Positions 976-63,050 of a stretch of DNA of 64,000 bases are shown in pieces. The notes beneath the pieces were generated by a model. It was given only the letters and a program-made list of their open reading frames with translations. It was not told the origin of the DNA and made no database searches. The stretch comes from Macrostomum lignano. Its lineage: Eukaryota. The position numbers were made by a program, and so were the translations under genes. Within the stretch, counting starts at the first letter, position 1. Each line of letters opens with the position of its first letter. Location of the stretch: positions 186,001 through 250,000 of the forward strand of contig NIVC01000176.1 in the NCBI GenBank assembly GCA_002269645.1, written 5' to 3'.

Positions 976-1162
976 AGCAAAAAGCAGCTACGATAGCAAT
1001 TATTCTGTCGCCAAGCCTGACCGCTCCGAAATCTCATTTATTTCAATTGGACGGTGGTAGCGCTGCCAATGGTAGACGATTGTGATGCAAATGAGATAAA
1101 ACAGGTAAATACCAGCAAAAAGAGGCGCTCTCTGCCTTCCACAGCACCGAAATCGAGCCAAC

Positions 1163-4100
1163 ATGGAAGCTCTTTGGAGAATCCTGACAGCCATTGCAGC
1201 AGTTCTGATGCAGACCTTCGGCAGGTCCGCAGGCCGAAGCGAGAGCCTTGATGGGACCGAACAGGAGATCCTGGAAGCTGTTATGTCCGAAAATGAAGCA
1301 ATAATTTCACGATACCTGCAGACGGCTCCTAACGTTGATAGGCTCCTCAGCATCTCACCGCTTCACATTGCATGCGAAATAGGAAAAGACAAAATTGTCG
1401 AGATGTTCATTCAGGCGAAAGCTGACGTCAATATTCAAGAAGTCGATGGCTGCTCACCTCTCTACGCTGCATCACAGAATGGTCACGACCAAGTTGTGAG
1501 CTCACTCATCAAAGCACAAGCTGACGTCAATCTTCAACGAAACACTGGCGAGTCACCTCTCTACATTGCATCACACTTTGGTCACGACCAAGTTGTGAGC
1601 TCACTCATCAAAGCACAAGCTGACGTCAATCTTCAACGAAACACTGGCGAGTCACCTCTCTACGCTGCATCACACTTTGGTCACGACCAAGTTGTGAGCT
1701 CACTCATCAAAGCACAAGCTGACGTCAATCTTCAAGAAGTCGATGGCTGCTCACCTCTCTACATTGCATCACAGAATGGTCACGACCAAGTTGTGAGCTC
1801 ACTCATCAAAGCACAAGCTGACGTCAATCTTCAACGAAACACTGGCTCGTCACCTCTCTACATTGCATCACAGAATGGTCACGACCAAGTTGTGAGCTCA
1901 CTCATCAAAGCACAAGCTGACGTCAATCTTCAACGAAACACTGGCGAGTCACCTCTCTACATTGCATCACAGAATGGTCACGACCAAGTTGTGAGCTCAC
2001 TCATCAAAGCACAAGCTGACGTCAATCTTCAACGAAACACTGGCGAGTCACCTCTCTACGCTGCATCACAGAATGGTCACGACCAAGTTGTGAGCTCACT
2101 CATCAAAGCACAAGCTGACGTCAATCTTCAACGAAACACTGGCTCGTCACCTCTCTACGCTGCATCACACTTTGGTCACGACCAAGTTGTGAGCTCACTC
2201 ATCAAAGCACAAGCTGACGTCAATCTTCAACGAAACACTGGCGAGTCACCTCTCTACGCTGCATCACACTTTGGTCACGACCAAGTTGTGAGCTCACTCA
2301 TCAAAGCACAAGCTGACGTCAATCTTCAAGAAGTCGATGGCTGCTCACCTCTCTACATTGCATCACAGAATGGTCACGACCAAGTTGTGAGCTCACTCAT
2401 CAAAGCACAAGCTGACGTCAATCTTCAACGAAACACTGGCTCGTCACCTCTCTACATTGCATCACAGAATGGTCACGACCAAGTTGTGAGCTCACTCATC
2501 AAAGCACAAGCTGACGTCAATCTTCAACAAATCCAAGGCGGTTCACCTCTCTACATTGCATCACAGAATGGTCACGACCAAGTTGTGAGCTCACTCATCA
2601 AAGCACAAGCTGACGTCAATCTTCAACGAAACACTGGCTCGTCACCTCTCTACGCTGCATCACAGAATGGTCACGACCAAGTTGTGAGCTCACTCATCAA
2701 AGCACAAGCTGACGTCAATCTTCAACGAAACACTGGCGAGTCACCTCTCTACGCTGCATCACACTTTGGTCACGACCAAGTTGTGAGCTCACTCATCAAA
2801 GCACAAGCTGACGTCAATCTTCAAGAAGTCGATGGCTGCTCACCTCTCTACATTGCATCACAGAATGGTCACGACCAAGTTGTGAGCTCACTCATCAAAG
2901 CACAAGCTGACGTCAATCTTCAACGAAACACTGGCTCGTCACCTCTCTACATTGCATCACAGAATGGTCACGACCAAGTTGTGAGCTCACTCATCAAAGC
3001 ACAAGCTGACGTCAATCTTCAACAAATCCAAGGCGGTTCACCTCTCTACATTGCATCACAGAATGGTCACGACCAAGTTGTGAGCTCACTCATCAAAGCA
3101 CAAGCTGACGTCAATCTTCAACGAAACACTGGCGAGTCACCTCTCTACGCTGCATCACAGAATGGTCACGACCAAGTTGTGAGCTCACTCATCAAAGCAC
3201 AAGCTGACGTCAATCTTCAACGAAACACTGGCGAGTCACCTCTCTACGCTGCATCACACTTTGGTCACGACCAAGTTGTGAGCTCACTCATCAAAGCACA
3301 AGCTGACGTCAATCTTCAAGAAGTCGATGGCTGCTCACCTCTCTACATTGCATCACAGAATGGTCACGACCAAGTTGTGAGCTCACTCATCAAAGCACAA
3401 GCTGACGTCAATCTTCAACGAAACACTGGCTCGTCACCTCTCTACGCTGCATCACACTTTGGTCACGACCAAGTTGTGAGCTCACTCATCAAAGCACAAG
3501 CTGACGTCAATCTTCAACGAAACACTGGCGAGTCACCTCTCTACGCTGCATCACAGAATGGTCACGACCAAGTTGTGAGCTCACTCATCAAAGCACAAGC
3601 TGACGTCAATCTTCAACGAAACACTGGCGAGTCACCTCTCTACATTGCATCACAGAATGGTCACGACCAAGTTGTGAGCTCACTCATCAAAGCACAAGCT
3701 GACGTCAATCTTCAACGAAACACTGGCGAGTCACCTCTCTACGCTGCATCACAGAATGGTCACGACCAAGTTGTGAGCTCACTCATCAAAGCACAAGCTG
3801 ACGTCAATCTTCAACGAAACACTGGCGAGTCACCTCTCTACGCTGCATCACACTTTGGTCACGACCAAGTTGTGAGCTCACTCATCAAAGCACAAGCTGA
3901 CGTCAATCTTCAACGAAACACTGGCTCGTCACCTCTCTACGCTGCATCACAGAATGGTCACGACCAAGTTGTGAGCTCACTCATCAAAGCACAAGCTGAC
4001 GTCAATCTTCAACGAAACACTGGCGAGTCACCTCTCTACGCTGCATCACACTTTGGTCACGACCAAGTTGTGAGCTCACTCATCAAAGCACAAGCTGACG

Positions 4101-7100
4101 TCAATCTTCAAGAAGTCGATGGCTGCTCACCTCTCTACATTGCATCACAGAATGGTCACGACCAAGTTGTGAGCTCACTCATCAAAGCACAAGCTGACGT
4201 CAATCTTCAACGAAACACTGGCTCGTCACCTCTCTACATTGCATCACAGAATGGTCACGACCAAGTTGTGAGCTCACTCATCAAAGCACAAGCTGACGTC
4301 AATCTTCAACAAATCCAAGGCGGTTCACCTCTCTACATTGCATCACAGAATGGTCACGACCAAGTTGTGAGCTCACTCATCAAAGCACAAGCTGACGTCA
4401 ATCTTCAACGAAACACTGGCGAGTCACCTCTCTACGCTGCATCACAGAATGGTCACGACCAAGTTGTGAGCTCACTCATCAAAGCACAAGCTGACGTCAA
4501 TCTTCAACGAAACACTGGCGAGTCACCTCTCTACGCTGCATCACACTTTGGTCACGACCAAGTTGTGAGCTCACTCATCAAAGCACAAGCTGACGTCAAT
4601 CTTCAAGAAGTCGATGGCTGCTCACCTCTCTACATTGCATCACAGAATGGTCACGACCAAGTTGTGAGCTCACTCATCAAAGCACAAGCTGACGTCAATC
4701 TTCAACGAAACACTGGCGAGTCACCTCTCTACATTGCATCACAGAATGGTCACGACCAAGTTGTGAGCTCACTCATCAAAGCACAAGCTGACGTCAATCT
4801 TCAACAAATCCAAGGCGGTTCACCTCTCTACATTGCATCACAGAATGGTCACGACCAAGTTGTGAGCTCACTCATCAAAGCACAAGCTGACGTCAATCTT
4901 CAACGAAACACTGGCGAGTCACCTCTCTACGCTGCATCACAGAATGGTCACGACCAAGTTGTGAGCTCACTCATCAAAGCACAAGCTGACGTCAATCTTC
5001 AACGAAACACTGGCGAGTCACCTCTCTACGCTGCATCACACTTTGGTCACGACCAAGTTGTGAGCTCACTCATCAAAGCACAAGCTGACGTCAATCTTCA
5101 AGAAGTCGATGGCTGCTCACCTCTCTACATTGCATCACAGAATGGTCACGACCAAGTTGTGAGCTCACTCATCAAAGCACAAGCTGACGTCAATCTTCAA
5201 CGAAACACTGGCGAGTCACCTCTCTACATTGCATCACAGAATGGTCACGACCAAGTTGTGAGCTCACTCATCAAAGCACAAGCTGACGTCAATCTTCAAC
5301 AAATCCAAGGCGGTTCACCTCTCTACATTGCATCACAGAATGGTCACGACCAAGTTGTGAGCTCACTCATCAAAGCACAAGCTGACGTCAATCTTCAACG
5401 AAACACTGGCGAGTCACCTCTCTACGCTGCATCACAGAATGGTCACGACCAAGTTGTGAGCTCACTCATCAAAGCACAAGCTGACGTCAATCTTCAAGAA
5501 GTCGATGGCTGCTCACCTCTCTACATTGCATCACAGAATGGTCACGACCAAGTTGTGAGCTCACTCATCAAAGCACAAGCTGACGTCAATCTTCAACGAA
5601 ACACTGGCGAGTCACCTCTCTACATTGCATCACAGAATGGTCACGACCAAGTTGTGAGCTCACTCATCAAAGCACAAGCTGACGTCAATCTTCAACGAAA
5701 CACTGGCGAGTCACCTCTCTACGCTGCATCACACTTTGGTCACGACCAAGTTGTGAGCTCACTCATCAAAGCACAAGCTGACGTCAATCTTCAAGAAGTC
5801 GATGGCTGCTCACCTCTCTACATTGCATCACAGAATGGTCACGACCAAGTTGTGAGCTCACTCATCAAAGCACAAGCTGACGTCAATCTTCAACGAAACA
5901 CTGGCGAGTCACCTCTCTACGCTGCATCACAGAATGGTCACGACCAAGTTGTGAGCTCACTCATCAAAGCACAAGCTGACGTCAATCTTCAACGAAACAC
6001 TGGCGAGTCACCTCTCTACGCTGCATCACAGAATGGTCACGACCAAGTTGTGAGCCTACTCAACAAAGCTCAAGATGCCGCCAATATCGAACATATTAGT
6101 AGTCAAGAAAATTCTAAATCATCTGCTTTGGAAGAACCACAGGAACAGTCAGAATTCGGGTGAGTTTCAATCGTTTTTTGGCGTTCTTTTCTTTAGATTT
6201 GCGATTTCTTGCAAAAAAATTTCTATTACTCTTTTACGTGTTCGAAAAGTTTGTGTAATTTTACAGGTCTGCAGCCAAAAGAGGCAGTTTTGAAAGTAGG
6301 AACAGAATTTAAACAGTGGAAGGCGAGAGCTTGCACAATTCTGAGTCAAGATGGATTTGGCATCGCTGATTTCAGCACACTAGTAGGAAAAGGGCTGACT
6401 GCCCCACTTCGCTGATTGGCCCAATTAGCGAGGAGGAGGACCTGGAGGTGGGGTGGGGCAGACTGGGGTTGGGTCGGAGGCTGTGAAGTGTTCACCGGAT
6501 TTTTCCAAGACTCAGAAGTAAATGCAATGTTTAGTTTCAAACGCGAGCAAACCCTAGCAGCCACAAAGGTGGTGGCCTAAATAGGCACACGCATGTACAA
6601 AGCACCCACCCCCCACCAGAAAGCCAACCAAACAGCCCCTTGCACTAAAGGCGGTTAGCCCTCGCGGGCTCGCGCAAACCGGTGCAAAATGTGGAGTTCA
6701 GGACCCCACCTGCCGCCATTCTAACGATGGGCATCGTCAGCCAATCAGCTTATTTTCCGACCGAGACCGTTCGACCAATAAAGTTCCCTCCGCAACCAGA
6801 CCACAAAAAATCTACATGAACAGCCAATGGACAATGAAAACTTTTCAGTAGCAAATCATACAGAAATTAGCTCTGGACACATCCAGTAGGCACTTGCCCC
6901 TGAGTCATGGACACTCAACCCCGAGTCATATGCGCTCACACTATGGACCCACCTCCGGATGCCCCACCCCACCTCCAGGAGCTCCTCCTCGCTTATTGGC
7001 TGGTGGGTCAACCTGTTTTCCTACTCCTCACACAAGTCAGGAAGTTTCTGCACCAATAGTTTTTGCGATTCTGCACCGCATTTTGGATCAACTGCTTACA

Positions 7101-10100
7101 ACAATTCATGCACTGTTCTGGAGTGCTGCCTATGCTACACAAATAAGTCAATTATCTCTTCTAGAAGTGCACCTTTTTCAACAACAACTAACATTTTAGA
7201 TGCAGTCCCAGCGACTCAGAGCTGAGCGAGCAGCTGCACTCAGCACTGGAGCAGTCAGGCTTTACCGAATCCCGAGCCGCATTGCAGAGCGCAGCTGCCG
7301 ATGCCCTGCAGCAGATTCTGAGAAGTCGAAAGAACTACAATTACATTTTTGTGGTCGGCAGCTACTCAGAAGGCTGGGGCAACAGCCTGACGACACTGGA
7401 CGGCAGAACTGACGCCAATTCCGACATTGATGTGATGGATTTGATTCCCGGCCGAGAATACCACCAGAGAGGCCTGTGCGAGTGCGATGGAGCTCCGGAG
7501 CAGCAGGAGTTGGTGAACGGGCACATTCAGTGCTCAGGATTCGGTGAGTTCACTCTCTTCTGTCTTCTGTTTGTCTTTCCGTTTGTCTGTCTTTCTGTTT
7601 GTCTGCCTTTCTGTTTGTCTGTCTTTCTGTTTGTCTGTCTTTCTATTTGAATGGAATAATTTTTTTTAAATAAACTGCATGTAGGTTATGAAACTTTTAT
7701 GCCTTAATTCCGCAAAAAGCATGTCATTTCAAGGAATGACTGTAAATGTACGTGTATCATTGCATACATGCATATGCTGAGTCTAATTGGATGCTCTCCT
7801 ACACCGAACATGTATACAGTATGTTACCACACTACATGACCGTACAACCTTGTAAAGTCACCATTGTTAATATCACAGGGAACCATGACTTTGAAAGCAA
7901 AAGATCATCCGCCCTGAAAGCCAGCAATGCAGCCTAAGACATCAGATCCTCTATAAGCTTTGGCTCAAAACACCTGAACAACTCCCAGTGAGCCAAGCAT
8001 TTCAGCAACACCCCCATAAGCCTTGACATCTCAGCAATTTCCTTCTTGAGACTTGACATCGCAGAAACCCCCCAATGACCTTGACATTTCAGCAACTCCC
8101 CCCCCTTGAGCCTTAGCATCTTTGCAATCCTCCCCGTGAGCCTTAGCATCTTTGCAATCCTCCCCGTGAGCCTTAGCATCTTTGCAATCCTCCCCGTCAG
8201 CCTTAGCATCTTTGCAATCCTCCACATGAGCCTTAGCATCTTTGCAATCCTCCACATGAGCCTTAGCATCTTTACAATTCTCCCCCGTGAGCCTTAGCAT
8301 CTTTACAATTCTCCCCCGTGAGCCTTAGCATCTTTACAATTCTCCCCCGTGAGCCTTAGCATCTTTGCAATCCTCCACATGAGCCTTAGCATCTTTGCAA
8401 TCCTCCACATGAGCCTTAGCATCTTTGCAATCCTCCACATGAGCCTTAGCATCTTTACAATTCTCCCCCGTGAGCCTTAGCATCTTTACAATTCTCCCCC
8501 GTGAGCCTTAGCATCTTTGCAATCCCCCCTGTGAGCCTTAGCATCTTTGCAATTCCCCCGACGACTTACGGAAGAATGTGGCTCGTCTTATCGCTCGGAG
8601 GAACTGGATGAGCCGTGGGATGCTGTCGGGCTGGCAGACCTTGTCAATAGACGGATTCGGCCCGAGATAGCGTGGCCGGTCTCTGGTAAAGAAAGGGCAG
8701 TGACAGACGAAGTGCTTTCCAAGCAAGGCCTTCTCTAGTTTATCGACCAGGACGTGCAGCGCGCTTTCGGTGGAGCGACCCGCCCGAAAAGCGTGCTCGT
8801 TTTCGCTGAGAGGCTTGTTCTTCAGTTTCGCAGAGAGAAGGCGCCAGAGCACCAGTCTCTCCATCAGCTTGACCAGGGAGGAGGTCAAGCTGATTGGTCT
8901 GAAGGATTTGATAGAATGGTAGTCCGGGCCGCTCTTAAGATGCGGTCCTCCGTGTGCAATTCCCCCGTGAGCCTTAGCATTTTTGTAATTCCCCCCATGA
9001 GTCTTTTATGCTTGACGGTGCGATTATTTTATGGTTGAACTGTAACCCTAACCCAGTGAGCCACAGCAATTCGGAACTTCTGTCCGTGAAACTTTCTTGA
9101 GACATTCTTTCATAAGTGAATTCTAACCCTACAGAGTCACAGCTTCTTCATGTTTGACATGATGCTTCTTAGTAGTTTATAGAATATGGAAATAATTTTC
9201 AACTGTTCTTCTTTCCCAACCAGTCCAAATCATCACTGCATTGACTCAAAGCAGTTTATTGCTCAACCAGTCCAAATCATCACTGCATTGACTCAAAGCA
9301 GTTTATTGCCCAATCTGTAACCAAAATACTTTTACAGCCTCCAATCCTGCTATAGCGACACCCGGATTCACACTGAGGCCAGCGCTGGACGATGTCTCTG
9401 CGTGCCGTCTCTGCCGCTACCCGCCCATCACGCCGCTGCTGCTAAACCGCGTCTCGAACATCCCCCCTCGGGTCCTGGAGGCTCTCCGGAAGGTTCTCAC
9501 CTCCGCCTCATTGCCCTGCCACGTGGTGCACGCAGCCTCTCCTGGCCGAGGCGGCAAAGAGCTCCGCGTGAGCACCAGCTTCCTGGAGAACCGGATGCTG
9601 CGAAGTCTCACTACCCTGCAAGGTCAGCTGTTCGTCACACTCAAATACCTGGTCAAGAAGGTCATCTGTCACAAGAATGGCTTCAATCAGCAAGGCTTGA
9701 GGTCCTACCACGTAAAGACCATCTTCTTCCGAATGGTGGACGAGACGCCGGTCGAGCAGTGGAAGAAGGAGAACCTCGTGATTCTCACGAGACAGTCGCT
9801 GCAGATGCTGCTCGACTGTGTGGAGAAGAGCCGAGAGCAGGACAGACAAACACCTGACACACCTGACCGATCTCGGGGTCGCATCATGAATCATTTCTTT
9901 CTCAGCGATGCGGCCATCTACCTCAAGGGTGCGGGCAAGGAGAGAGTGGAGCAGCATTTGGACGGCATCACGAGCACACTGAGAACAGTAATCGATCGGC
10001 TGCCCCAACTGCTGCAGCAGTTCATCGGCAGTCTCAGACCTGTGAGCGACTCAGGCACATTCTACTTCCACCCGTTCCAAATCCTGCCGAAGCTGAGTCC

Positions 10101-10791
10101 GATGCCCCTCACGAAGTCCAGTACTCTTGAGTACTACCAGATCTACGACGTGGTGAGAGAGTGTCTGGTGGGTCTCTCTTGCAGTGACTGCAGCCCGCGA
10201 TCTCAGGAGTCGCTCACAGAGCTGATTGCCAGACTGCCAGACTGCGCCCTCTCAGCACGGGAGGCTCTCAGAGCGCTGGCTTGCCTGAAGTTCGGCTACC
10301 GAGGAACTGCAGAGAGAGTCGTGAGCTCGTGCTCAGGTCACTCGGTGAGCAGAGGCATCGCTTGGTCTCGTGAGAAGTCTGCGACTGAAGCGACTGTGGA
10401 GTTCCTGATGCGGCATCTGAGCAGCCGCGACTCGACGTGGAAGTTCTGCTTTTTTTTCGACCAGCAACCGAAACTCGAATTCTTGACAGGAGCTCTGAGG
10501 GAGTGCTTTCCCCTCCGGTTGTCAGGCAGTGCTGTCTATTTCTACATGAACTTTGACGCTCTGCTGTGGGCTCTGCGGCTGGAGCTGCGGACTGATGGAG
10601 AAGCGAGCGCTCAGGACTGGATCCGGGATGTGGCGGAGAGAGAGAACTCGGATGAGCAGGAGCTGCAGGTTGCCGCTTTTTATGCTTCGAATCCGGAGCA
10701 GATTTCGAATATGTTAAAGAAGCTGAAGATGATGGAAGCAGATCTTCTCAATTGGCTGAAGGCGAGACTCCGGGAAAAATGGCAGACTTAA
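1163..10791 (+). CDS. Ankyrin-repeat / Mab-21 (cGAS-like receptor, cGLR) nucleotidyltransferase fusion, 3 exons (1163-6159, 7200-7543, 9338-10791), ~2264 aa
   Basis: Donor GG|GTGAGT at 6159/6160 (phase 2) joins acceptor TTTTAG|A at 7199/7200. Donor G|GTGAGT at 7543/7544 (phase 1) joins TTTTACAG|CC at 9337/9338. Total 6795 nt = 2265 codons. Exon 2 has VGSYSEG...NSDIDV (NTase GS + DxD). Exon 3 has ALDDVSACRLCRYP (third acidic strand, then the WP-like position), LRVSTSFLENRML, SYHVKTIFF and NHFF, which are Mab-21 family motifs. Confidence 0.9.
1439..6055 (+). repeat. Coding tandem array of 47 x 99-bp (33-aa) ankyrin repeats with very high internal conservation
   Basis: Consensus G-x-SPLY[I/A]AS[QN/HF]GHDQVVSSLIKAQADVNLQ. 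First and last units lie 46 x 99 nt apart. A divergent N-cap repeat (ISPLHIACEIGKDKIVEMFIQAKADVN) precedes them. Confidence 0.97.
7960..8560. repeat. 30/31-bp intronic minisatellite (gagccttagcatctttgcaatcctccccgt)
   Basis: ~15 well-conserved copies at 8100-8560, degenerate copies from 7960, and one further unit after the LINE insert at 8955-9000. Confidence 0.92.
8561..8954 (-). mobile_element. Truncated, internally deleted non-LTR retrotransposon (R1/LOA/I-like LINE) with 13-bp flanking direct repeat
   Basis: Minus strand reads HLKSGPDYHSIKSFRPISLTSSLVKLMERLV...LSENEHAFRAGRSTESALHVLVDKLEKAL (LINE RT N-terminal motifs), then HFVCHCPFFTRDRPRYLG (resembles the LINE C-terminal Cys/His tail). 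TGCAATTCCCCCG lies at 8548-8560 and 8955-8967. Confidence 0.85.
9217..9309. repeat. 47-bp tandem duplication just upstream of the cGLR exon 3 acceptor
   Basis: caaccagtccaaatcatcactgcattgactcaaagcagtttattgc starts at 9217 and at 9264. Confidence 0.9.
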
Positions 10792-11529
10792 AGGGCTTCT
10801 GGACAGCGAGAAACTGCAGGAAGTTTTATGCAGTACTTGAAAACTTTAAAGCGCTGGGTGAGCTGTCAATTAATAATTTATTAACCGAATTTTTTACTTT
10901 ATTTCCAGCAGTCGAAAAACAGCGCGAGTTCACCGCGCGTTGGAAAATTTTTCCTCAGATAAACAAAAATTGCCAAGTTAAATTCTCGCAGCTGTAGCTG
11001 CTTGTTTGTCAAGTTTTTATCACCATAAACTGTTTAGTGACTACTAGGAGACAAGGATACAGCAACTAATGATTGGTAAACTACCTATGCAATTTTATTC
11101 AAGGACCACTAGCAATCTGTCAGGCATATTTGTAGGATAAAAACTCCCGATTCCTGATTCCCGATTCGCTCCACTCCCCTCTCCTCTCTTATCTCTCATC
11201 TCACCTCTCTTTTCTCTCCTCTCTGCCTTCTCTCCTCTCTCATCTTCTCTCTCTCATTTGTCTTCTCTCATATTTCCACTCTTTTCTCCTCTCTTTTCGC
11301 CGGCTGTGCGATCTCCAAGAGCACCCTGAATGCACTGGCGATGCGACAAACCTGCGTTCCTCACCGCCCTCTGGCTCGTTTCTAGGAAAATCGAGTCTTT
11401 CTACTCCAGTTGTCCATGGCTTCAGCATGCAGGTGCCAAAAGAGTAAAGACCCATTGAGCGCCTCTAAATCCCTTGCGCTTAGAAGCCTTGATCTGCATG
11501 TAGATTACGAATAAGCAAAGAGTTGGCCA

Positions 11530-12320
11530 GTGAGCGAATCCCAGTCGATGGTGAGCGAATCCCAGTCGATGGTGAGCGAATCCCAGTCGATGGTGAGCGA
11601 ATCCCAGTCAATAGTGAATGAATCCCAGTCAATAGTGAATGAATCCCAGTCAATAGTGAATGAATCCCAGTCGATAGTGAATGAATCCCAGTCAATAGTG
11701 AATGAATCCCAGTGGATGGTGAGCGAATCCCAGTCGATGGTGAGCGAATCCCAGTCGATGGTGAGCGAATCCCAGTCAATAGTGAATGAATCCCAGTCAA
11801 TAGTGAATGAATCCCAGTCAATAGTGAATGAATCCCAGTCGATAGTGAATGAATCCCAGTCAATAGTGAATGAATCCCAGTGGATGGTAAGCGAATCCCA
11901 GTCGATAGTGAATGAATACCAGTCGATAGTGAATGAATACCAGTCGATAGTGAACGAATCCCAGTCGATAGTGAACGAATCCCAGTCGATAGTGAATGAA
12001 TCCCAGTCGATGGTGAATGAATCCCAGTCGATAGTGAATGAATACCAGTCGATAGTGAACGAATCCCAGTCGATAGTGAACGAATCCCAGTCGATAGTGA
12101 ATGAATCCCAGTCGATAGTGAACGAATCCCAGTCGATAGTGAATGAATCCCAGTCGATAGTGAATGAATCCCAGTCGATAGTGAACGAATCCCAGTCGAT
12201 AGTGAATGAATCCCAGTCGATAGTGAATGAATCCCAGTCGATAGTGAATGAATCCCAGTCGATAGTGAACGAATCCCGGTCGATAGTGAATGAATCCCAG
12301 TCGATAGTGAGCGAATCCCA
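11530..12320. repeat. 21-bp minisatellite (gaatcccagtcgatagtgaat), ~37 copies
   Basis: Direct tandem periodicity; produces the spurious ESQSIVN ORF. Confidence 0.95.
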
Positions 12321-12684
12321 ACAGATGCTTACATGTGGTTACTTTTGTTGATTTTTCTCCAACTTCATCTAACAATCAGACTGGCGATTGCAAACTGTAA
12401 TTTTGAGTTTCAGCGATTTTTCATTTTGGATAAAAGGTTTTAATCGTTGAGCGGATGTCTGTGACCTCAGCCGTCTTAGCAAGCTCACTGTTATAAATTT
12501 GTTAAAAATGCAGACTTTCTCAACAATACTGACAGCTTGGCATTATTTTATCAGCCAGGTAACTGCATGCAAGTTTTTAATCGAACTCGCTTTGGTCAGC
12601 AGCTAACAGATATGGCTGTATTTATGATTTGCTGTGTGTTATGTAGCCATGTTAACTGTGTGTTTGCATACACACACATTAATG

Positions 12685-12870
12685 TTTACTGGTATTAACT
12701 GGTATTTCCTGGTATTAACTGGTGTTTCCTGGTATTAACTGGTGTTTCCTGGTATTAACTGGTGTTTCCTGGTATTAACTGGTGTTTCCTGGTATTAACT
12801 GGTGTTTCCTGGTATTAACTGGTGTTTAATGGTATTTACTGGTATTTACTTGTGTTTACTCGTGTTTACT
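12685..12870. repeat. 20-bp minisatellite (ggtgtttcctggtattaact)
   Basis: ~6 near-perfect copies decaying into 10-bp subunits. Confidence 0.85.
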
Positions 12871-13324
12871 GGTGTTTACTGGTATATACTGCTATTATTG
12901 CATGAATTTTCAATATTTTCCACTATTTCCTGCTGTGTTTCATACTTCAGGTTCCTTCTTAATTGGTATTCTGTTGTCGTAGAAAAAGAAGTCACGATTG
13001 CTGCAAAAAATCATATCGTTTGCAGGATGAAAGCACCGTATTAATTTGCTGTTTCTGGTTAACCATTTCCTGATTTGCCTCTCTGATTCATCTTTGCTAA
13101 TATTTATTATGACAGCTTCTGTCCGAATAGTTCATTGATTGAGCTTGTAACTATTGCTTGGCGTCAGCAACTGCACTTTAATATTCATTGCTTCCAAAAA
13201 AACGTTGACCTTGCAATGGCACCACAATTAATCCATTCTACCTGACAGCTACTTAGTTTAAGAAAAAATGAAAGTAAACAATTAAACCGGTGGTTACAAC
13301 ATTAGGTAGTTAATTCTTTAATTA

Positions 13325-27415: not shown

Positions 27416-28186
27416 TCAGTTGAATGGCGACACGCACTCGCACAGCACGAATGGCGGTCTGTTGACCGACGGAGAGGCTGGGAAATCATTGAGACCCGGC
27501 ATTCCATGAAACCTGTGCACCGTGTTCTCGTCTATTGTAGAGGCATTGTCCGGCTGGCCGGTGCCCCACAGGCCGCCGGACACGCTGGCGTTGCAGCCGA
27601 CCCAGACCCAGCCGCCTGCTGGCTCCCGGCTGCCCGGAGACTGGAAGCCTCCAAGCCACATTGACTTCGACTGGCTGAAGTACGCGGCATTGAAATGGTT
27701 GTCAATGAAGGACATCTCAGCTGCATCCTCCACATCCGCCATGATCACCAGTCCGCTGTCATTCTCGCACTTCTGCTTGGCGTCCCACCAGTTGCCGGAG
27801 ATTGGGTACACCTTGTACTTCACTCCGCACCGCTCCTGGGCGTAACCAGCCGGACACAGGCGGCCGGGCTGCAGTCCTGCTCGGCTCTTCACAAACAGCC
27901 GGCCTGTCCGAGAGCAGCTGCACTTCCTCACGCCTTTGCTGCACCTGTCGAACACGAACAGCTGGCACGGACCGTCTGCAGTGCTGAATGCCTGGCAGCG
28001 CTGCCTGATGCTGCACTGCACTGAGCATTGCATCTCCGAGGTAGGACCGGCAGGGTCAATGCTGATGACCTCCGTGAACTTGCTGTTGATGCACAGGCTG
28101 GCTGTCACCGGCTCGAAGGTGTAACGACACTGCTGACCGCCGACTGCCTTGCAGAGGGCGAACAGAAGAAGCAGAGCTGACTTCAT
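27416..28186 (-). CDS. Secreted PAN/apple-like + C-type lectin domain protein (intronless, 256 aa)
   Basis: Signal peptide MKSALLLLFALCKAVGG. PAN-like CSVQCSIRQRCQAF. CTLD motifs WWDAKQKC, MWLGG, WVW, WGTGQPDN, LND and terminal LCE. Confidence 0.88.
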   Translation of the reverse strand: MKSALLLLFALCKAVGGQQCRYTFEPVTASLCINSKFTEVISIDPAGPTSEMQCSVQCSIRQRCQAFSTADGPCQLFVFDRCSKGVRKCSCSRTGRLFVKSRAGLQPGRLCPAGYAQERCGVKYKVYPISGNWWDAKQKCENDSGLVIMADVEDAAEMSFIDNHFNAAYFSQSKSMWLGGFQSPGSREPAGGWVWVGCNASVSGGLWGTGQPDNASTIDENTVHRFHGMPGLNDFPASPSVNRPPFVLCECVSPFN

Positions 28187-31020: not shown

Positions 31021-32280
31021 GTGAGTGACTGGAGGAGTGACTGGAGGAGTGACTGGGGATTGACTGGAGGAGTGACTGGAGGAGTGACTGGAGGAGTGAC
31101 TGGAGGAGTGACTGGAGGAGTGACTGGAGGAGTGACTGGAGGAGTGACTGGAGGAGTGACTGGAGGATTGACTGGAGGAGTGACTGGAGGAGTGACTGGA
31201 GGAGTGACTGGAGGAGTGACTGGAGGAGTGACTGGAGGAGTGACTGGAGGAGTGACTGGAGGAGTGACTGGAGGAGTGACTGGAGGATTGACTGGAGGAG
31301 TGACTGGAGGAGTGACTGGAGGAGTGACTGGAGGAGTGACTGGAGGAGTGACTGGAGGAGTGACTGGAGGAGTGACTGGAGGAGTGACTGGAGGAGTGAC
31401 TGGAGGAGTGACTGGAGGATTGACTGGAGGAGTGACTGGAGGAGTGACTGGAGGAGTGACTGGAGGAGTGACTGGAGGAGTGACTGGAGGAGTGACTGGA
31501 GGAGTGACTGGAGGAGTGACTGGAGGAGTGACTGGAGGAGTGACTGGAGGAGTGACTGGAGGAGTGACTGGAGGAGTGACTGGAGGAGTGACTGGAGGAG
31601 TGACTGGAGGATTGACTGGAGGAGTGACTGGAGGAGTGACTGGAGGAGTGACTGGAGGAGTGACTGGAGGAGTGACTGGAGGAGTGACTGGAGGAGTGAC
31701 TGGAGGAGTGACTGGAGGAGTGACTGGAGGAGTGACTGGAGGATTGACTGGAGGAGTGACTGGAGGAGTGACTGGAGGAGTGACTGGAGGATTGACTGGA
31801 GGAGTGACTGGAGGAGTGACTGGAGGAGTGACTGGAGGAGTGACTGGAGGAGTGACTGGAGGAGTGACTGGAGGAGTGACTGGAGGATTGACTGGAGGAG
31901 TGACTGGAGGATTGACTGGAGGAGTGACTGGAGGAGTGACTGGAGGAGTGACTGGAGGAGTGACTGGAGGAGTGACTGGAGGAGTGACTGGAGGAGTGAC
32001 TGGAGGAGTGACTGGAGGAGTGACTGGAGGAGTGACTGGAGGAGTGACTGGAGGATTGACTGGAGGAGTGACTGGAGGAGTGACTGGAGGAGTGACTGGA
32101 GGAGTGACTGGAGGAGTGACTGGAGGAGTGACTGGAGGAGTGACTGGAGGAGTGACTGGAGGATTGACTGGAGGAGTGACTGGAGGATTGACTGGAGGAG
32201 TGACTGGAGGAGTGACTGGAGGAGTGACTGGAGGAGTGACTGGAGGAGTGACTGGAGGAGTGACTGGAGGAGTGACTGGT
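31021..32280. repeat. 12-bp minisatellite (ggagtgactgga), ~105 copies
   Basis: Near-perfect array with a recurring ggattg variant; produces the spurious GGVT ORF. Confidence 0.97.
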
Positions 32281-32734
32281 TGAGTGACTCGGTGATTCAG
32301 CTTCTTACCAAGGCAAACTCGACCTCATCATCAGCTCGCTGTGGAAGGATTTAGACGTCTTCCATCCGTCTGTCTCTCTCCTAACAACCGGGCCTCATCT
32401 CTATCGAATTCAGATTCATCTCGAACTCGCAGGGAAAGGAAACCGATTCGGTAAGGATGGCCCTGCCTGCAAATTATCCAAGCTCCTGCAAATCAAGTTT
32501 GGGCGGAGTCACCCGCTATTAAAGTTTAGTTGGGTTGGTTTATCCGCATACCATCTGTCTCTGCGAATCTGTTGGACCAATATGAGCTCTTTTCTTCAAG
32601 CCTCAGTATTTCTATTGTCGTTACTTCTTTGCTTCTGTTTGTTCCCGCGGCGGTGAAAGATTTTCCCATCCTGTCAACACGATGTAGGACTTTTACACGA
32701 TGGGTATTTTTCGGGCTTTGGAAATTCCCCAGTT

Positions 32735-33634
32735 TGTAGCTCCCAGTCTGTAGCTCCCAGTCTGTAGCTCCCAGTCTGTAGCTCCCAGTCTGTAGCTCCC
32801 AGTCTGTAGCTCCCAGTCTGTAGCTCCCAGTCTGTAGCTCCCAGTCTGTAGCTCCCAGTCTGTAGCTCCCAGTCTGTAGCTCCCAGTCTGTAGCTCCCAG
32901 TCTGTAGCTCCCAGTCTGTAGCTCCCAGTCTGTAGCTCCCAGTCTGTAGCTCCCAGTCTGTAGCTCCCAGTCTGTAGCTCCCAGTCTGTAGCTCCCAGTC
33001 TGTAGCTCCCAGTCTGTAGCTCCCAGTCTGTAGCTCCCAGTCTGTAGCTCCCAGTCTGTAGCTCCCAGTCTGTAGCTCCCAGTCTGTAGCTCCCAGTCTG
33101 TAGCTCCCAGTCTGTAGCTCCCAGTCTGTAGCTCCCAGTCTGTAGCTCCCAGTCTGTAGCTCCCAGTCTGTAGCTCCCAGTCTGTAGCTCCCAGTCTGTA
33201 GCTCCCAGTCTGTAGCTCCCAGTCTGTAGCTCCCAGTCTGTAGCTCCCAGTCTGTAGCTCCCAGTCTGTAGCTCCCAGTCTGTAGCTCCCAGTCTGTAGC
33301 TCCCAGTCTGTAGCTCCCAGTCTGTAGCTCCCAGTCTGTAGCTCCCAGTCTGTAGCTCCCAGTCTGTAGCTCCCAGTCTGTAGCTCCCAGTCTGTAGCTC
33401 CCAGTCTGTAGCTCCCAGTCTGTAGCTCCCAGTCTGTAGCTCCCAGTCTGTAGCTCCCAGTCTGTAGCTCCCAGTCTGTAGCTCCCAGTCTGTAGCTCCC
33501 AGTCTGTAGCTCCCAGTCTGTAGCTCCCAGTCTGTAGCTCCCAGTCTGTAGCTCCCAGTCTGTAGCTCCCAGTCTGTAGCTCCCAGTCTGTAGCTCCCAG
33601 TCTGTAGCTCCCAGTCTGTAGCTCCCAGTCTGTA
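32735..33634. repeat. 14-bp minisatellite (tgtagctcccagtc), ~64 apparently identical copies
   Basis: Homogeneous array, open in all three minus-strand frames. Confidence 0.97.
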
Positions 33635-34327
33635 TACCCAGACTGCAACTTTTGGGTCCCAGAAAGAGAACGCACAAATGCCAGTCACTCAGGATATAGT
33701 TGTGTTGGCCTTCAGCCAGCCTATTTTACTGCGAGCGCTGAGTCATTCATCCTACATGTAGTTTACAGCGGTCATCCCCCGGTTCCCTGAGACGAACAGC
33801 AGCTTAGCAACAGTGCAGCATCGGCATGCTTTTGGACAGACTTGGTGGACAGATGACCCAAGCCCTGTCCTAGCACGCAACAGTTGCACATCCTGGATGT
33901 GTCAGAATTGCGGTCAGCATGTTTCCTTGGGTGGATAAGGGCTATTATAGGCTATTTTCTGGCCTGGTAACTAAACGTGTCCGTCTGTCTGTCTGCCGTC
34001 CGATGGTGTTCCTGTAGACGAGAGAGACAGGGGCATGCGCCGCCCAATATCCTGATGTTTCTACAGCTGTGCGCTCTGCAGTTTCTCCGCCCAGGTGACC
34101 AGGATACGTCAAACATAGTTTAGCAATCTGTTTTTCCTGCTTTACTGGATATTACTGGATATATTTGTTTATTAACAGGCTTGACCTTGGCTTACTGTGA
34201 TGGCGATTGGGGAAACAGTAGTGGATCTAGACTGATCTGAATGAAATATATTTAACAATCAATAAAAGCTATTTAGAGCTATTTATGGTTCTGCATTTCT
34301 CGGCTAGCAAGTATTTGTAGTTTGTCG

Positions 34328-44852: not shown

Positions 44853-45119
44853 TGTATATACATTCAGAGTTGCAGGACACACCGGTTCCCTTTTGGATAT
44901 TGTTATTTGCGTAATAATTTCTCGATTTCACGGTGGGTCACCTGGGCTGGCGCAGTTGCAGTGAAAACATTTTCAATATTTGCTGTTTGTTGCATTTAAA
45001 CTGGCCTCATTCTGTGTGCGGCAGAATTGCGCAGCCATGGAACAGCAATTGCAGTCGAGTTCTTCTTTTTTACTCATAATTCGTCATATCCAGATCGAAA
45101 AAAGCCGACAACAAGTCCA

Positions 45120-62800: not shown

Positions 62801-63050
62801 CCTCAGCTGACGCGTCCTTCATGCGAAAGAGCATCGAGTGCTTGTTGGAGCCGCTGCCGTAGCCGCCGCTGCGGACGACAATCGCCAGGATGAATATGAA
62901 GCAGAGCACGTACACGAAGGTACAGGTGAAGATGCACAGCAGGCAGTCGGGACTCTTCAATCGGTTGGAGGCTCGATGACAGATGGCCGAGCAGATCCGG
63001 CCGGCCCTTCGAAGGCGCCACATGAGGCCTGGCAATGCTGCCGCATGCAA
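59811..63050 (-). CDS. GT31 family beta-1,3-glycosyltransferase (B3GALT/Brainiac-like), 3 exons (63050-62004, 61383-61192, 60101-59811)
   Basis: Type II anchor CLLCIFTCTFVYVLCFIFILAIV. Motifs LLVLVKS...REAIRRTW, VYFLLG, DLLVREFVDHYFNNTLK, FVDDDFFVN, YPPYVAAG.LFMS and RFDDIFIG. Both introns are GT-AG and phase 0. The start could be 63050 or the next ATG (MWRLRR). Confidence 0.92.
60131..61046. repeat. Composite 24-bp/30-bp minisatellite in GT31 intron 2
   Basis: Type A cccgctcccacctgtgtttgaatc (24 bp) and type B acatgtaatctccgctcccacctgtgttct (30 bp), arranged A-B-A-B. Confidence 0.93.
61428..61890. repeat. 22-bp minisatellite in GT31 intron 1
   Basis: ggagaagccactttgagtgtca, ~20 copies. Confidence 0.92.

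What the first reader, a model, noticed from the sequence alone, without database searches (positions are those of the whole stretch)
1163..10791. Hidden giant ankyrin-cGLR (cGAS-like) receptor assembled from three separate ORFs
Seen: two phase-matched GT-AG introns join the 47-ankyrin exon to a Mab-21 nucleotidyltransferase. It keeps GS(YSEG), SDID and a third acidic strand (LDDVSA...YP), plus SYHVKT. Established: these motifs define the cGAS/Mab-21 (cGLR) family, whose active members make cyclic dinucleotides for innate signalling. Accessory domains including ankyrins occur on some invertebrate cGLRs, so the fusion itself may not be new. Inference: a ~2260-aa sensor-enzyme in which a very long ankyrin solenoid replaces or augments nucleic-acid sensing, possibly detecting proteins and triggering second-messenger synthesis.
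Basis: partly seen in the sequence, partly recalled or inferred. Interest (0 to 1): 0.9.

Follow-up and report, generated by a model that had tools for sequence, protein, structure and literature searches.

The report
Giant ankyrin-repeat cGAS-like enzyme gene
Three open reading frames in this flatworm (Macrostomum) window most likely splice into one 2264-residue protein that joins 48 near-identical ankyrin repeats to a cGAS-like signalling enzyme; it belongs to a gene family already catalogued as cGAS-like receptors, so it is a striking new member, not a new kind of system.

Summary
Exons 1163-6159, 7200-7543 and 9338-10791 join in frame through two GTGAGT...AG introns to give 2264 aa with one terminal stop. 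There are 48 ankyrin repeats, not 47.

No RNA data exist for this locus. However, transcriptome-derived models of Macrostomum lignano paralogues use the same two intron positions and phases. The closest relative is joined at the identical FG|CSPSD junction. A separate trans-spliced Mab-21 mRNA would start with a stop codon.

The C-terminal part hits Pfam Mab-21_C above threshold. It folds like cGAS (Foldseek E = 4e-6) and carries GS, DxD and a third Asp in the spacing published for cGLR active sites. Enzyme activity is untested.

Li et al. 2023 already counted this Macrostomum family as cGLRs and cloned five members. They also described ANK-cGLR fusions. The fusion is therefore known.

Three points were not in the finding:
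- Repeat variation is entirely non-synonymous and confined to the ankyrin binding face.
- A paralogue shows the same pattern, with its own fixed scaffold.
- A conserved 255-aa C-terminal domain has no structural match.

Verdict: a new member of a known kind. The ankyrin array probably senses a non-nucleic-acid ligand, which is inferred.

The parts
1145..1162 (+). Probable 5' UTR. It follows a strong polypyrimidine-AG acceptor (ctctctgccttccacAG, ending at 1144) that could be an SL trans-splice site.
   Evidence: this is the only AG within 80 nt upstream that has a 0.87 pyrimidine tract. It lies 18 nt before the ATG, so the ATG that ends the spliced leader would be in frame. In-frame stops lie further upstream. 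This is inference only; there are no reads.
1163..6159 (+). Exon 1 coding part: N-terminal 56 aa with a hydrophobic helix, then 48 ankyrin repeats, then an acidic linker. It ends with 2 bases of a Gly codon (phase 2).
   Evidence: The N-terminus MEALWRILTAIAAVLMQTFGRS resembles the N-terminus of the full-length paralogue P0008, MGFLQRLFSAVAACCLRVFGRR. Pfam Ank/Ank_2 E = 1e-42.
1331..6082 (+). Ankyrin array: 48 repeats of 33 aa (99 bp), built from 12 distinct DNA units.
   Evidence: Repeats 2-47 have 16 variable nucleotide sites. All are non-synonymous and lie in codons 2, 4, 5, 6, 8, 13, 16 and 17. There are no synonymous variants. The longest exact internal duplicate is 862 nt.
6160..7199 (+). 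Intron 1 (1040 nt), GTGAGT...TTTTAG. Without splicing, the frame stops at TGA 6161-6163.
   Evidence: The 98 nt before the acceptor are conserved with M. lignano locus L001.
7200..7543 (+). Exon 2: N-terminal spine helix of the NTase core, the G54-S55 motif (7357-7362) and D76-x-D78 (7423-7431). It ends in phase 1.
   Evidence: G54, S55, D76 and D78 are invariant in 11 family members. There is a weak Pol-beta palm signal (PF22600, E = 0.013, below threshold).
7544..9337 (+). Intron 2 (1794 nt), GTGAGT...TTTTACAG. It contains a 30-bp minisatellite (8102-8560) and a minus-strand ORF (8538-8888) that looks by eye like a reverse-transcriptase fragment.
   Evidence: The homologous intron in L001 is only about 370 nt. 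The RT resemblance was not confirmed; Pfam found nothing.
9338..10791 (+). Exon 3: the strand carrying the third acidic residue D133 (9388-9390), the Mab-21_C domain (about 9637-9831, with SYHVKT at 9703-9720), the conserved C-terminal domain, and the stop TAA at 10789-10791.
10024..10788 (+). C-terminal domain of 255 aa. It is mostly helical with a small sheet, is conserved in the whole family, and has no known fold match.
   Evidence: AF2 model pLDDT 83.8, pTM 0.86. Best Foldseek PDB hit has E = 0.32, with only TPR-like hairpins. No Pfam hit.

Best explanation
This is one protein-coding gene of a Macrostomum flatworm with three coding exons. It encodes a protein of about 245 kDa made of four parts:
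- a short hydrophobic N-terminal helix;
- a 48-repeat ankyrin solenoid;
- a divergent cGAS/Mab-21-type nucleotidyltransferase with an intact catalytic signature;
- a family-specific C-terminal domain of unknown fold.

It belongs to a large gene family, found here only in Macrostomum, that has already been counted among the cGAS-like receptors.

Shown here: the in-frame gene model, its conservation in paralogues, the fold, and the motif pattern.

Inferred mechanism: the concave face of the ankyrin solenoid binds a ligand, more likely a protein or another non-nucleic-acid molecule. All variation between repeats sits on that face. Ligand binding then relieves or induces the active conformation of the attached NTase. 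The NTase makes a nucleotide second messenger for a downstream receptor that has not been identified in this genus.

The array evolves by unequal crossing-over and gene conversion. The scaffold is homogenised while diversity at the binding positions is retained, as described for the recognition repeats of fungal NLR proteins.

The confidence value is for the whole statement. My separate estimates are about 0.85 for the gene model, about 0.85 for cGLR-family membership, and about 0.4 for the ligand-activated mechanism with the ankyrin array as sensor.
For: Gene model:
- The splice product is in frame and the splice sites are canonical.
- P0008 is a GenBank BOX15 model. BOX15 models come from a genome-guided transcriptome assembly (PMC5730564). 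P0008 has the same two intron positions and phases.
- P0002 and P0189, the closest relatives, join an ankyrin repeat to the module at the same EF(G/E)|CS junction.
- About 15 further M. lignano proteins of 1100-1575 aa span both the ANK region and the module.
- If the spliced leader were trans-spliced onto the 7199 acceptor, the Mab-21 frame would begin with TGA. The first in-frame Met is residue 79 of the exon-2 frame (module residue 80), which lies after the GS and DxD motifs.

Family assignment:
- PF20266 Mab-21_C scores 26.2-26.8 bits against a gathering score of 24.1, and all 11 members tested hit it.
- The AF2 model of the 88 %-identical P0001 has pLDDT 83 and pTM 0.86.
- The top 36 Foldseek PDB hits are cGAS, MAB21L1 or MB21D2, with best E = 4.2e-6 and TM 0.5-0.57.
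- A family profile finds cGAS in the PDB at E = 4e-6.
- G54, S55, D76 and D78 are invariant, and D133 is present in 10 of 11 members.
- The pattern DIDV-X52-LDD fits the published [DE]h[DE]h-X50-90-h[DE]h motif.
- Li et al. 2023 cloned five M. lignano members as cGLRs.

Sensor role of the ANK array:
- The 16 variable nucleotide sites are all non-synonymous and lie in 8 codons (P = 6.5e-13 for that clustering).
- The 7 recurrently variable codons include all five high-entropy binding positions 2, 3, 5, 10 and 13 (P = 9e-5).
- A paralogue shows the same variable face on a different, internally fixed scaffold.
- The same evolutionary signature is published for fungal NLR ANK repeats (PMC4986451).
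Against: - No transcript evidence exists for this exact locus. The support is comparative.
- Pfam's NTase-core model PF03281 gives no hit.
- HMMER and hhalign align only the C-lobe to cGAS. The equivalence of the GS, DxD and D residues with those of cGAS therefore rests on pattern, order of secondary-structure elements, and whole-domain fold match.
- The spacing from GS to DxD is 20 residues, longer than in cGAS.
- Model coordinates are not exposed, so convergence of the three acidic residues could not be measured.
- Macrostomum does not appear in the main text of Li et al., so none of the five cloned relatives is described among the 15 characterised active enzymes.
- No STING is known in flatworms. 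Planarians lack both cGAS and STING.
- The repeats are so alike (exact duplicates up to 862 nt) that the copy number depends on the assembly. Because the unit length is a multiple of 3 and the unit has no stop codon, an open frame over 4.7 kb is not by itself evidence of selection.
Confidence: 0.6

Rival explanations
1. These are two separate genes. One is an ankyrin-only protein that ends at the TGA at 6161-6163. The other is an independent Mab-21 gene whose mRNA starts at the 7199 acceptor by SL trans-splicing from a polycistronic precursor.
For: M. lignano trans-splices about 30 % of its genes, and about 7 % of assembled transcripts are polycistronic precursors. The closest GenBank model, P0001 in L001, is annotated without any ankyrin part, and no ANK array lies within 10 kb upstream there. 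An AATAAA occurs in intron 1 at 6777.
Against: With the SL (which ends ...GCATG) joined to 7200, the Mab-21 frame reads TGA at the junction. The SL's own ATG opens only a 71-codon out-of-frame ORF. The first in-frame Met lies after the GS and DxD motifs. P0001 is flagged partial, and the older model of the same locus (P0189) includes an ankyrin repeat joined at the identical junction. Transcript-derived paralogue models join ANK to the module at the same position and phase.
Confidence: 0.07
2. The gene model is right, but the Mab-21 module is not a signalling enzyme. It would be a non-catalytic scaffold or nucleotide-binding adaptor, like MAB21L1 or MiD49/51, and the protein would be a large ankyrin scaffold.
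For: There is no PF03281 hit. MAB21L1 and MiD51/49 are among the structural matches. Five relatives were cloned for a 140-enzyme screen, and none is discussed among the active enzymes. No STING has been reported in flatworms. The GS-to-DxD loop is unusually long.
Against: G54, S55, D76 and D78 are invariant, and D133 is kept in 10 of 11 paralogues that are only 40-60 % identical overall. Such conservation is not expected if catalysis were lost. Li et al. state that their census excludes or labels Mab21L-type proteins that lack a predicted active site, and they chose these Macrostomum proteins for an activity screen. They also note that many cGLRs appear inactive in vitro because their ligand is unknown.
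Confidence: 0.2
3. The 48-copy array is not a stable biological feature. It would be an assembly artefact, or a very recent and possibly polymorphic minisatellite-like expansion of a gene that normally has about 10-25 repeats. The 'giant' size would then carry no functional meaning.
For: There is no synonymous divergence among 46 repeats, and exact internal duplicates reach 862 nt. The window is full of other tandem minisatellites. The paralogue in L002 has only 10-11 repeats in the genome. A 99-bp stop-free unit keeps the frame open whatever the copy number.
Against: The units are not one monotonous copy. There are 12 types arranged in higher-order blocks such as ABFEC and ABDEC, which is what unequal crossing-over gives and not what a simple collapse or expansion artefact gives. 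Differences between types are confined to the binding face. Other family members reach 1575-1613 aa even in models that under-count repeats.
Confidence: 0.25

Closest known systems
Macrostomum lignano ANK-Mab-21 paralogues (for example BOX15_Mlig022307g1 = P0008, BOX15_Mlig031899g1 = P0006, BOX15_Mlig007069g1 = P0046) and the five M. lignano cGLRs cloned by Li et al. 2023 (PAA86972.1, PAA45980.1, PAA57558.1, PAA93208.1, PAA68676.1)
   Same: They share the architecture (N-terminal helix, ANK array, NTase module, C-terminal domain), the intron positions and phases, and the catalytic motif. Module identity is 45-90 %.
   Different: This locus has 48 repeats and 2264 aa, whereas annotated relatives have about 600-1600 aa. 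The annotated models skip repeats through non-canonical 'introns', so they under-count. The window's protein itself is not in the protein collection; the best hit is 88 % identical.
ANK-cGLR fusions of other animals, such as those of the coral Stylophora pistillata (Li et al. 2023)
   Same: An ankyrin-repeat module is fused to a cGLR NTase domain. The authors interpret it as a possible protein- or ligand-interaction domain.
   Different: No detectable sequence relatives were found outside Macrostomum at the sensitivity used, so the fusion may have arisen independently. No published case known to me has such a long, internally homogenised array.
Vertebrate cGAS (PDB 8g2p, 6ct9, 4o6a and others)
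   Same: The fold is bilobed, with an NTase core and a helical C-lobe (Foldseek E = 4e-6, TM about 0.5-0.57). The C-lobe motif SYH(V/A)KT and the W-containing helix align at sequence level. The GS/DxD/D pattern is present.
   Different: Identity is only about 15 %. The NTase core is not alignable by sequence. The GS-DxD loop is longer. The pI is 8.4, against 9.1 for the cGAS catalytic domain. The protein has an extra ANK array and an extra C-terminal domain. Nucleic-acid activation has not been shown.
Orphan or non-immune Mab-21 proteins (human MB21D2, MAB21L1) and MiD49/MiD51
   Same: They share the fold, and their ligand is unknown or there is no known product.
   Different: [quoted passage not shown] This family keeps the triad.
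Recognition repeats of fungal NLR (STAND) proteins with high internal repeat conservation (Dyrka et al. 2014, PMC4986451)
   Same: The ANK/TPR/WD repeats within a gene are near-identical. They undergo concerted evolution by repeat shuffling. Hypervariable or positively selected positions map to the concave binding surface.
   Different: The signalling module is a NACHT/NB-ARC ATPase in fungi, not an NTase in an animal. Positive selection was not formally tested here.
Designed ankyrin-repeat libraries (DARPins, ANK-N5C; PMC4308713)
   Same: Both have an invariant consensus scaffold with diversity only at beta-turn and helix-1 positions 2, 3, 5, 10 and 13 (plus 14 in DARPins, from memory). These are the positions that vary in this natural array.
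   Different: The libraries are engineered proteins of 2-5 repeats. Here the array is a natural 48-repeat one with only 2-4 alternative residues per position.

Membership tests
cGAS-like receptors (cGLR; Mab-21 superfamily of Pol-beta-type NTases) | Mab-21 C-terminal helical (HhH/H2TH-like) domain | tested here: met
   PF20266 scores 26.2-26.8 bits (gathering 24.1) at module residues 216-280. All 11 family members tested hit it. A family profile finds cGAS in the PDB at E = 4e-6 over the same stretch.
cGAS-like receptors (cGLR; Mab-21 superfamily of Pol-beta-type NTases) | Bilobed cGAS/Mab-21 fold, including the NTase core | tested here: met
   The AF2 model of the 88 %-identical orthologue P0001 has pLDDT 83.3 and pTM 0.86. 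The top 36 Foldseek PDB hits are cGAS, MAB21L1 or MB21D2, covering 366-434 alignment columns of 346-403-residue targets, with TM 0.41-0.57. Caveat: the model is of P0001, not of the window's own protein.
cGAS-like receptors (cGLR; Mab-21 superfamily of Pol-beta-type NTases) | Sequence-level recognition of the NTase core (Pfam PF03281 Mab-21) | tested here: inconclusive
   No hit at E <= 1 for the window protein or for 10 relatives. hhalign to human cGAS aligns only residues 157-275. There is a weak sub-threshold Pol-beta palm signal (PF22600, E = 0.013) on exon 2. UniProt names some family fragments 'NTP_transf_2 domain-containing'. A missed HMM shows divergence, not absence of the core.
cGAS-like receptors (cGLR; Mab-21 superfamily of Pol-beta-type NTases) | Active-site signature G-S ... 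[DE]h[DE]h - X50-90 - h[DE]h (as defined by Li et al. 2023) | tested here: met
   The window protein has G54-S55, D76-I-D78-V, then 52 residues, then L132-D133-D134. G54, S55, D76 and D78 are invariant, and D133 is present in 10 of 11 members. In the model, these residues lie after strand 1, at the start of strand 2, and in a later core strand. The residue after D133 is not hydrophobic here and varies across the family.
cGAS-like receptors (cGLR; Mab-21 superfamily of Pol-beta-type NTases) | The three acidic residues converge on a metal-binding site in three dimensions | not testable with these tools
   The prediction tool returns confidence and secondary structure but no coordinates.
cGAS-like receptors (cGLR; Mab-21 superfamily of Pol-beta-type NTases) | Ligand-dependent synthesis of a nucleotide second messenger | not testable with these tools
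   This needs biochemistry. Five relatives were cloned by Li et al., but the text held here gives no activity result for them.
cGAS-like receptors (cGLR; Mab-21 superfamily of Pol-beta-type NTases) | A cognate receptor (STING or other) in the same genome | not tested
   The window holds none. Planarians lack STING. Macrostomum is not listed in the stored part of Table S5 of Li et al..
Ankyrin-repeat proteins | Tandem 33-residue ANK repeats | tested here: met
   Pfam Ank_2 E = 1.8e-42 and Ank E = 7.9e-42 on the first 246 aa. There are 48 units in exact 33-aa register.

The most novel reading that the evidence does not exclude
Macrostomum, unlike other flatworms, may have built a lineage-specific immune repertoire of dozens of cGLRs. 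In this reading, ligand recognition has moved from the NTase surface to an ankyrin solenoid that diversifies the way fungal NLR repeats do: the scaffold is homogenised by unequal crossing-over and variation is kept only on the binding face. This locus would be the extreme case, with 48 repeats. These receptors would sense proteins or other non-nucleic-acid ligands. They would signal through the conserved C-terminal domain of unknown fold, or through a receptor other than STING.
Probability: 0.2. Interest if true: 0.8.

Novelty: new member of a known kind. Interest (0 to 1): 0.45.

Why it matters
Most animal cGLRs are orphans. Li et al. 2023 state that many look inactive in vitro, probably because their ligands are unknown. 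A cGLR whose only variable surface is the binding face of an attached ankyrin solenoid gives a concrete and testable idea of where a non-nucleic-acid ligand would bind.

Macrostomum lignano is suitable for testing this because it has established transgenesis. The family also marks Macrostomum as an exception among flatworms, which otherwise lost cGAS and STING.

There is also a practical point. Annotated models of this family skip repeats, so their sizes are underestimated.

Tried and rejected
I stayed within the rule and used P0001 as the first row, adding the window's exons as separate rows.

2. My alignment A2 still contained ankyrin columns. Only the list of long ANK+module proteins was usable.

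3. hhalign of the trimmed family profile against human cGAS aligned only the C-lobe, at 73 % probability. No residue-level alignment of the catalytic core was obtained.

4. A second profile search with the trimmed alignment found only M. lignano proteins. There were no bridging relatives.

5. I looked for an ankyrin array upstream of the closest GenBank locus, L001. None lies within 10 kb and there are no N runs.

6. I looked for activity data on the five cloned Macrostomum cGLRs in Table S3 of Li et al. The stored text gives none.

7. A fold search of the C-terminal 255 aa found nothing significant.

8. Locus L003 (P0006) was fetched but did not appear in the script folder, so its exon map was not made.

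9. I considered and rejected a bacterial or viral origin. The introns, the Macrostomum-only hits and the neighbouring ASC-channel and galactosyltransferase genes show an animal genome.


Full report
**What is in the sequence**

The window is eukaryotic. The ORF at 1163..6163 (+) encodes 1666 aa that are almost entirely ankyrin repeats (Pfam Ank_2 E = 1.8e-42). The reading frame runs into a GTGAGT donor at 6160. Without splicing, it stops at TGA 6161-6163.

An acceptor, ttttAG, ends at 7199. A second GTGAGT donor starts at 7544. A second acceptor, ttttacAG, ends at 9337. Joining 1163-6159, 7200-7543 and 9338-10791 gives 6795 nt and 2264 codons with one terminal stop. Intron 1 is phase 2 and intron 2 is phase 1. 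The repeat count is 48, not 47.

**Is it one gene?**

I have no RNA data for this locus, so the case is comparative. It is still strong.

- The best protein matches are all Macrostomum lignano proteins, at up to 88 % identity.
- Many single gene models there carry both ankyrin repeats and the same C-terminal module.
- The GenBank BOX15 models are not ab initio predictions. They come from a genome-guided transcriptome assembly using StringTie, TACO, de novo transcripts and TransDecoder (PMC5730564).
- I mapped one of them, P0008, onto its contig. It has introns at the same two positions and in the same phases as proposed here: phase 2 five residues before the SD.(E/D)LS motif, and phase 1 at G(F/Y)|AS.
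- The two closest relatives, P0002 and P0189, join an ankyrin repeat to the module at the same ...EF(G/E)|CS(P/L)SDSEL junction.
- Exons 2 and 3 are 90-92 % identical at DNA level to M. lignano locus L001. Intron 2 is about 370 nt there and 1794 nt here.

The serious rival is SL trans-splicing, which is common in this genus. I tested it by computation. The spliced leader ends in ...GCATG. When it is joined to base 7200, the Mab-21 frame reads TGA at the junction. The leader's own ATG opens only a 71-codon out-of-frame ORF. The first in-frame Met lies downstream of the GS and DxD motifs. A stand-alone Mab-21 mRNA from this acceptor would therefore not encode an intact enzyme.

At the 5' end, in-frame stops precede ATG 1163. 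A good acceptor ends at 1144, 18 nt upstream. The N-terminal 22 residues resemble those of the full-length paralogue P0008. The start codon is therefore probably right.

**What the C-terminal part is**

- Pfam Mab-21_C (PF20266) passes its gathering score, both in the window protein and in all 11 family members tested. The NTase-core model PF03281 does not hit.
I therefore modelled P0001, which is 88 % identical and spans both junctions, using a family alignment. The model has pLDDT 83.3 and pTM 0.86.
- The top 36 Foldseek PDB matches are cGAS, MAB21L1 and MB21D2. The best has E = 4.2e-6. TM-scores normalised to the target are 0.5-0.57, and the alignments cover the whole catalytic domain. Bacterial CD-NTases and MiD51/49 follow.
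- In a trimmed family alignment, G54, S55, D76 and D78 are invariant, and D133 is present in 10 of 11 members.
- The pattern D76-I-D78-V, then 52 residues, then L-D133-D fits the active-site definition of Li et al. 2023, [DE]h[DE]h-X50-90-h[DE]h.

There are limits. Sequence methods align only the C-lobe to cGAS. I also could not measure whether the three acidic residues converge, because no coordinates are returned.

**What was already known**

Li et al. [quoted passage not shown] They also report that a minority of cGLRs are fused to ankyrin or TPR repeats.

Their Table S3 lists five M. lignano proteins (rows 89-93) cloned for the 140-enzyme screen. Those sequences are plainly members of this family. 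Macrostomum is not mentioned in their main text. They stress that many cGLRs look inactive in vitro for want of the right ligand.

So the fusion and the family are known. This locus is a new and extreme member. A profile search with the NTase module found only M. lignano proteins, so the family looks restricted to this lineage at that sensitivity. Planarians lack both cGAS and STING (PMC13563047).

**The ankyrin array**

The array spans 1331-6082 and holds 48 units in exact register, built from only 12 distinct 99-bp units. In repeats 2-47 there are 16 variable nucleotide sites. All are non-synonymous. All lie in codons 2, 4, 5, 6, 8, 13, 16 and 17. There is not one synonymous difference.

The probability of that clustering by chance is 6.5e-13. 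The probability that 16 of 16 changes are non-synonymous under neutrality is 0.014.

If the conserved Gly is numbered 4, the seven recurrently variable codons are positions 1, 2, 3, 5, 10, 13 and 14. Positions 2, 3, 5, 10 and 13 are the high-entropy positions of natural ankyrin repeats. They form the continuous binding surface and were randomised in a designed library (PMC4308713). The chance of including all five is 9e-5.

The paralogue in L002 shows the same pattern. Its scaffold positions 18-33 are invariant within the gene, yet they differ from this gene at six fixed positions. The face types RNT-G-E and RNT-G-S occur in both genes. Their codon 8 differs by three nucleotides (GAG versus TCG), so independent origin is unlikely.

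This is the signature of concerted evolution of the scaffold with diversity retained at the binding face. It has been described for the ANK, TPR and WD repeats of fungal NLRs (PMC4986451). I did not run a formal selection test.

Two cautions apply. First, exact internal duplicates reach 862 nt, so the copy number depends on how well long reads resolved the array. Second, a stop-free 99-bp unit keeps the frame open at any copy number.

**A third domain**

Beyond the point where cGAS ends, the family has about 255 further conserved residues (window 10024-10788). They fold confidently on their own (pLDDT 83.8). They have no significant match in the PDB; the best hit has E = 0.32 and shows only TPR-like hairpins. 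They have no Pfam hit. Their role is unknown. The constructs of Li et al. included this region.

**How it most likely works**

Shown: the protein is a single polypeptide that joins a long ankyrin solenoid to a cGAS-fold NTase with a conserved catalytic signature.

Inferred: the concave face of the solenoid is the ligand-binding surface. It is the only part that varies. The array is acidic (pI 5.3), and the NTase module is only mildly basic (pI 8.4). Both properties point away from nucleic acid as the ligand of the array. Binding would switch on the NTase, which would then make a nucleotide signal. The receptor for that signal is unknown.

My estimates are about 0.85 that the gene model is right, about 0.85 that it belongs to the cGLR family, and about 0.4 that it is a ligand-activated signalling enzyme whose sensor is the ankyrin array.

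**Verdict**

It is not a new kind of system. It is a new and unusually large member of a catalogued family. The repeat-array evolution pattern and the unassigned C-terminal domain deserve follow-up. No step had to be referred.

Noticed in passing
window 1331-6082: The 48 ankyrin repeats show no synonymous variation. All differences lie in 8 codons on the beta-turn and helix-1 binding face. Unit types are arranged in higher-order blocks (type string IJKABFDCGABFEHABFECABGCDCAHABFECABDECABDECBDABCL).
   Followed up: yes
L002 6001-7509 (M. lignano NIVC01001474.1): The annotated protein P0008 (871 aa) skips ankyrin repeats through two non-canonical 'introns' (CTTCAA|gtagtc...cttcaa|CTCAAC). The genome has a continuous 503-aa exon 1 with 10-11 repeats. 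Published models of this family therefore under-count repeats, probably because short-read transcripts collapse them.
   Followed up: partly
window 10024-10788: A conserved C-terminal domain of about 255 aa, beyond the cGAS-like fold. It is confidently modelled but has no PDB fold match and no Pfam family. The weak top hits are TPR-like (TRIF N-terminal domain, Fis1).
   Followed up: yes
window 1128-1162: A strong polypyrimidine-AG acceptor ends at 1144, 18 nt before the start codon. If the M. lignano spliced leader (which ends in ATG) were added there, its ATG would be in frame and would add MHRNRAN to the N-terminus.
   Followed up: partly
window 1163-1330: The N-terminal 22 residues (MEALWRILTAIAAVLMQTFGRS) form a hydrophobic segment shared with paralogue P0008 (MGFLQRLFSAVAACCLRVFGRR). 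This may be a membrane-association or targeting helix. It was not analysed further.
   Followed up: no
window 7544-9337: Intron 2 carries a 30-bp minisatellite (8102-8560, about 15 copies) and a minus-strand ORF (8538-8888) that looks by eye like a reverse-transcriptase fragment (..HAFRAGRSTESAL..). Pfam gave no hit. The homologous intron in M. lignano L001 is only about 370 nt.
   Followed up: partly
window 11529-12320; 31021-33688; 60046-61152; also 769-976, 12683-12883: The window is rich in tandem minisatellites, for example a 21-bp unit repeated 38 times just downstream of the gene. These produce long spurious ORFs on both strands.
   Followed up: no
window 45027-47006 (+); 61977-63050 (-); 27419-28186 (-): The neighbouring genes look unrelated to the finding. 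They are an amiloride-sensitive sodium channel family protein (PF00858, E = 1e-37), a galactosyltransferase domain (PF01762, E = 1.5e-16), and a secreted-looking protein with a sub-threshold C-type lectin match (E = 0.002). No second family member lies in the window.
   Followed up: partly
P0015 and P0114 (M. lignano UniRef models): P0015 (1036 aa) contains one complete, divergent Mab-21 module followed by an ankyrin fragment and the start of a second module close to the window's. P0114 (1409 aa, named 'Delta-like protein') starts with the module. These could be tandem genes merged by prediction, or real multi-domain fusions.
   Followed up: no
L001 1-10000 (M. lignano NIVC01001460.1): The closest GenBank locus has exons 2 and 3 but no ankyrin array within 10 kb upstream. 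Yet the older-assembly model of the same gene (P0189) includes an ankyrin repeat. Either its intron 1 is very long or the contig is mis-assembled there.
   Followed up: partly
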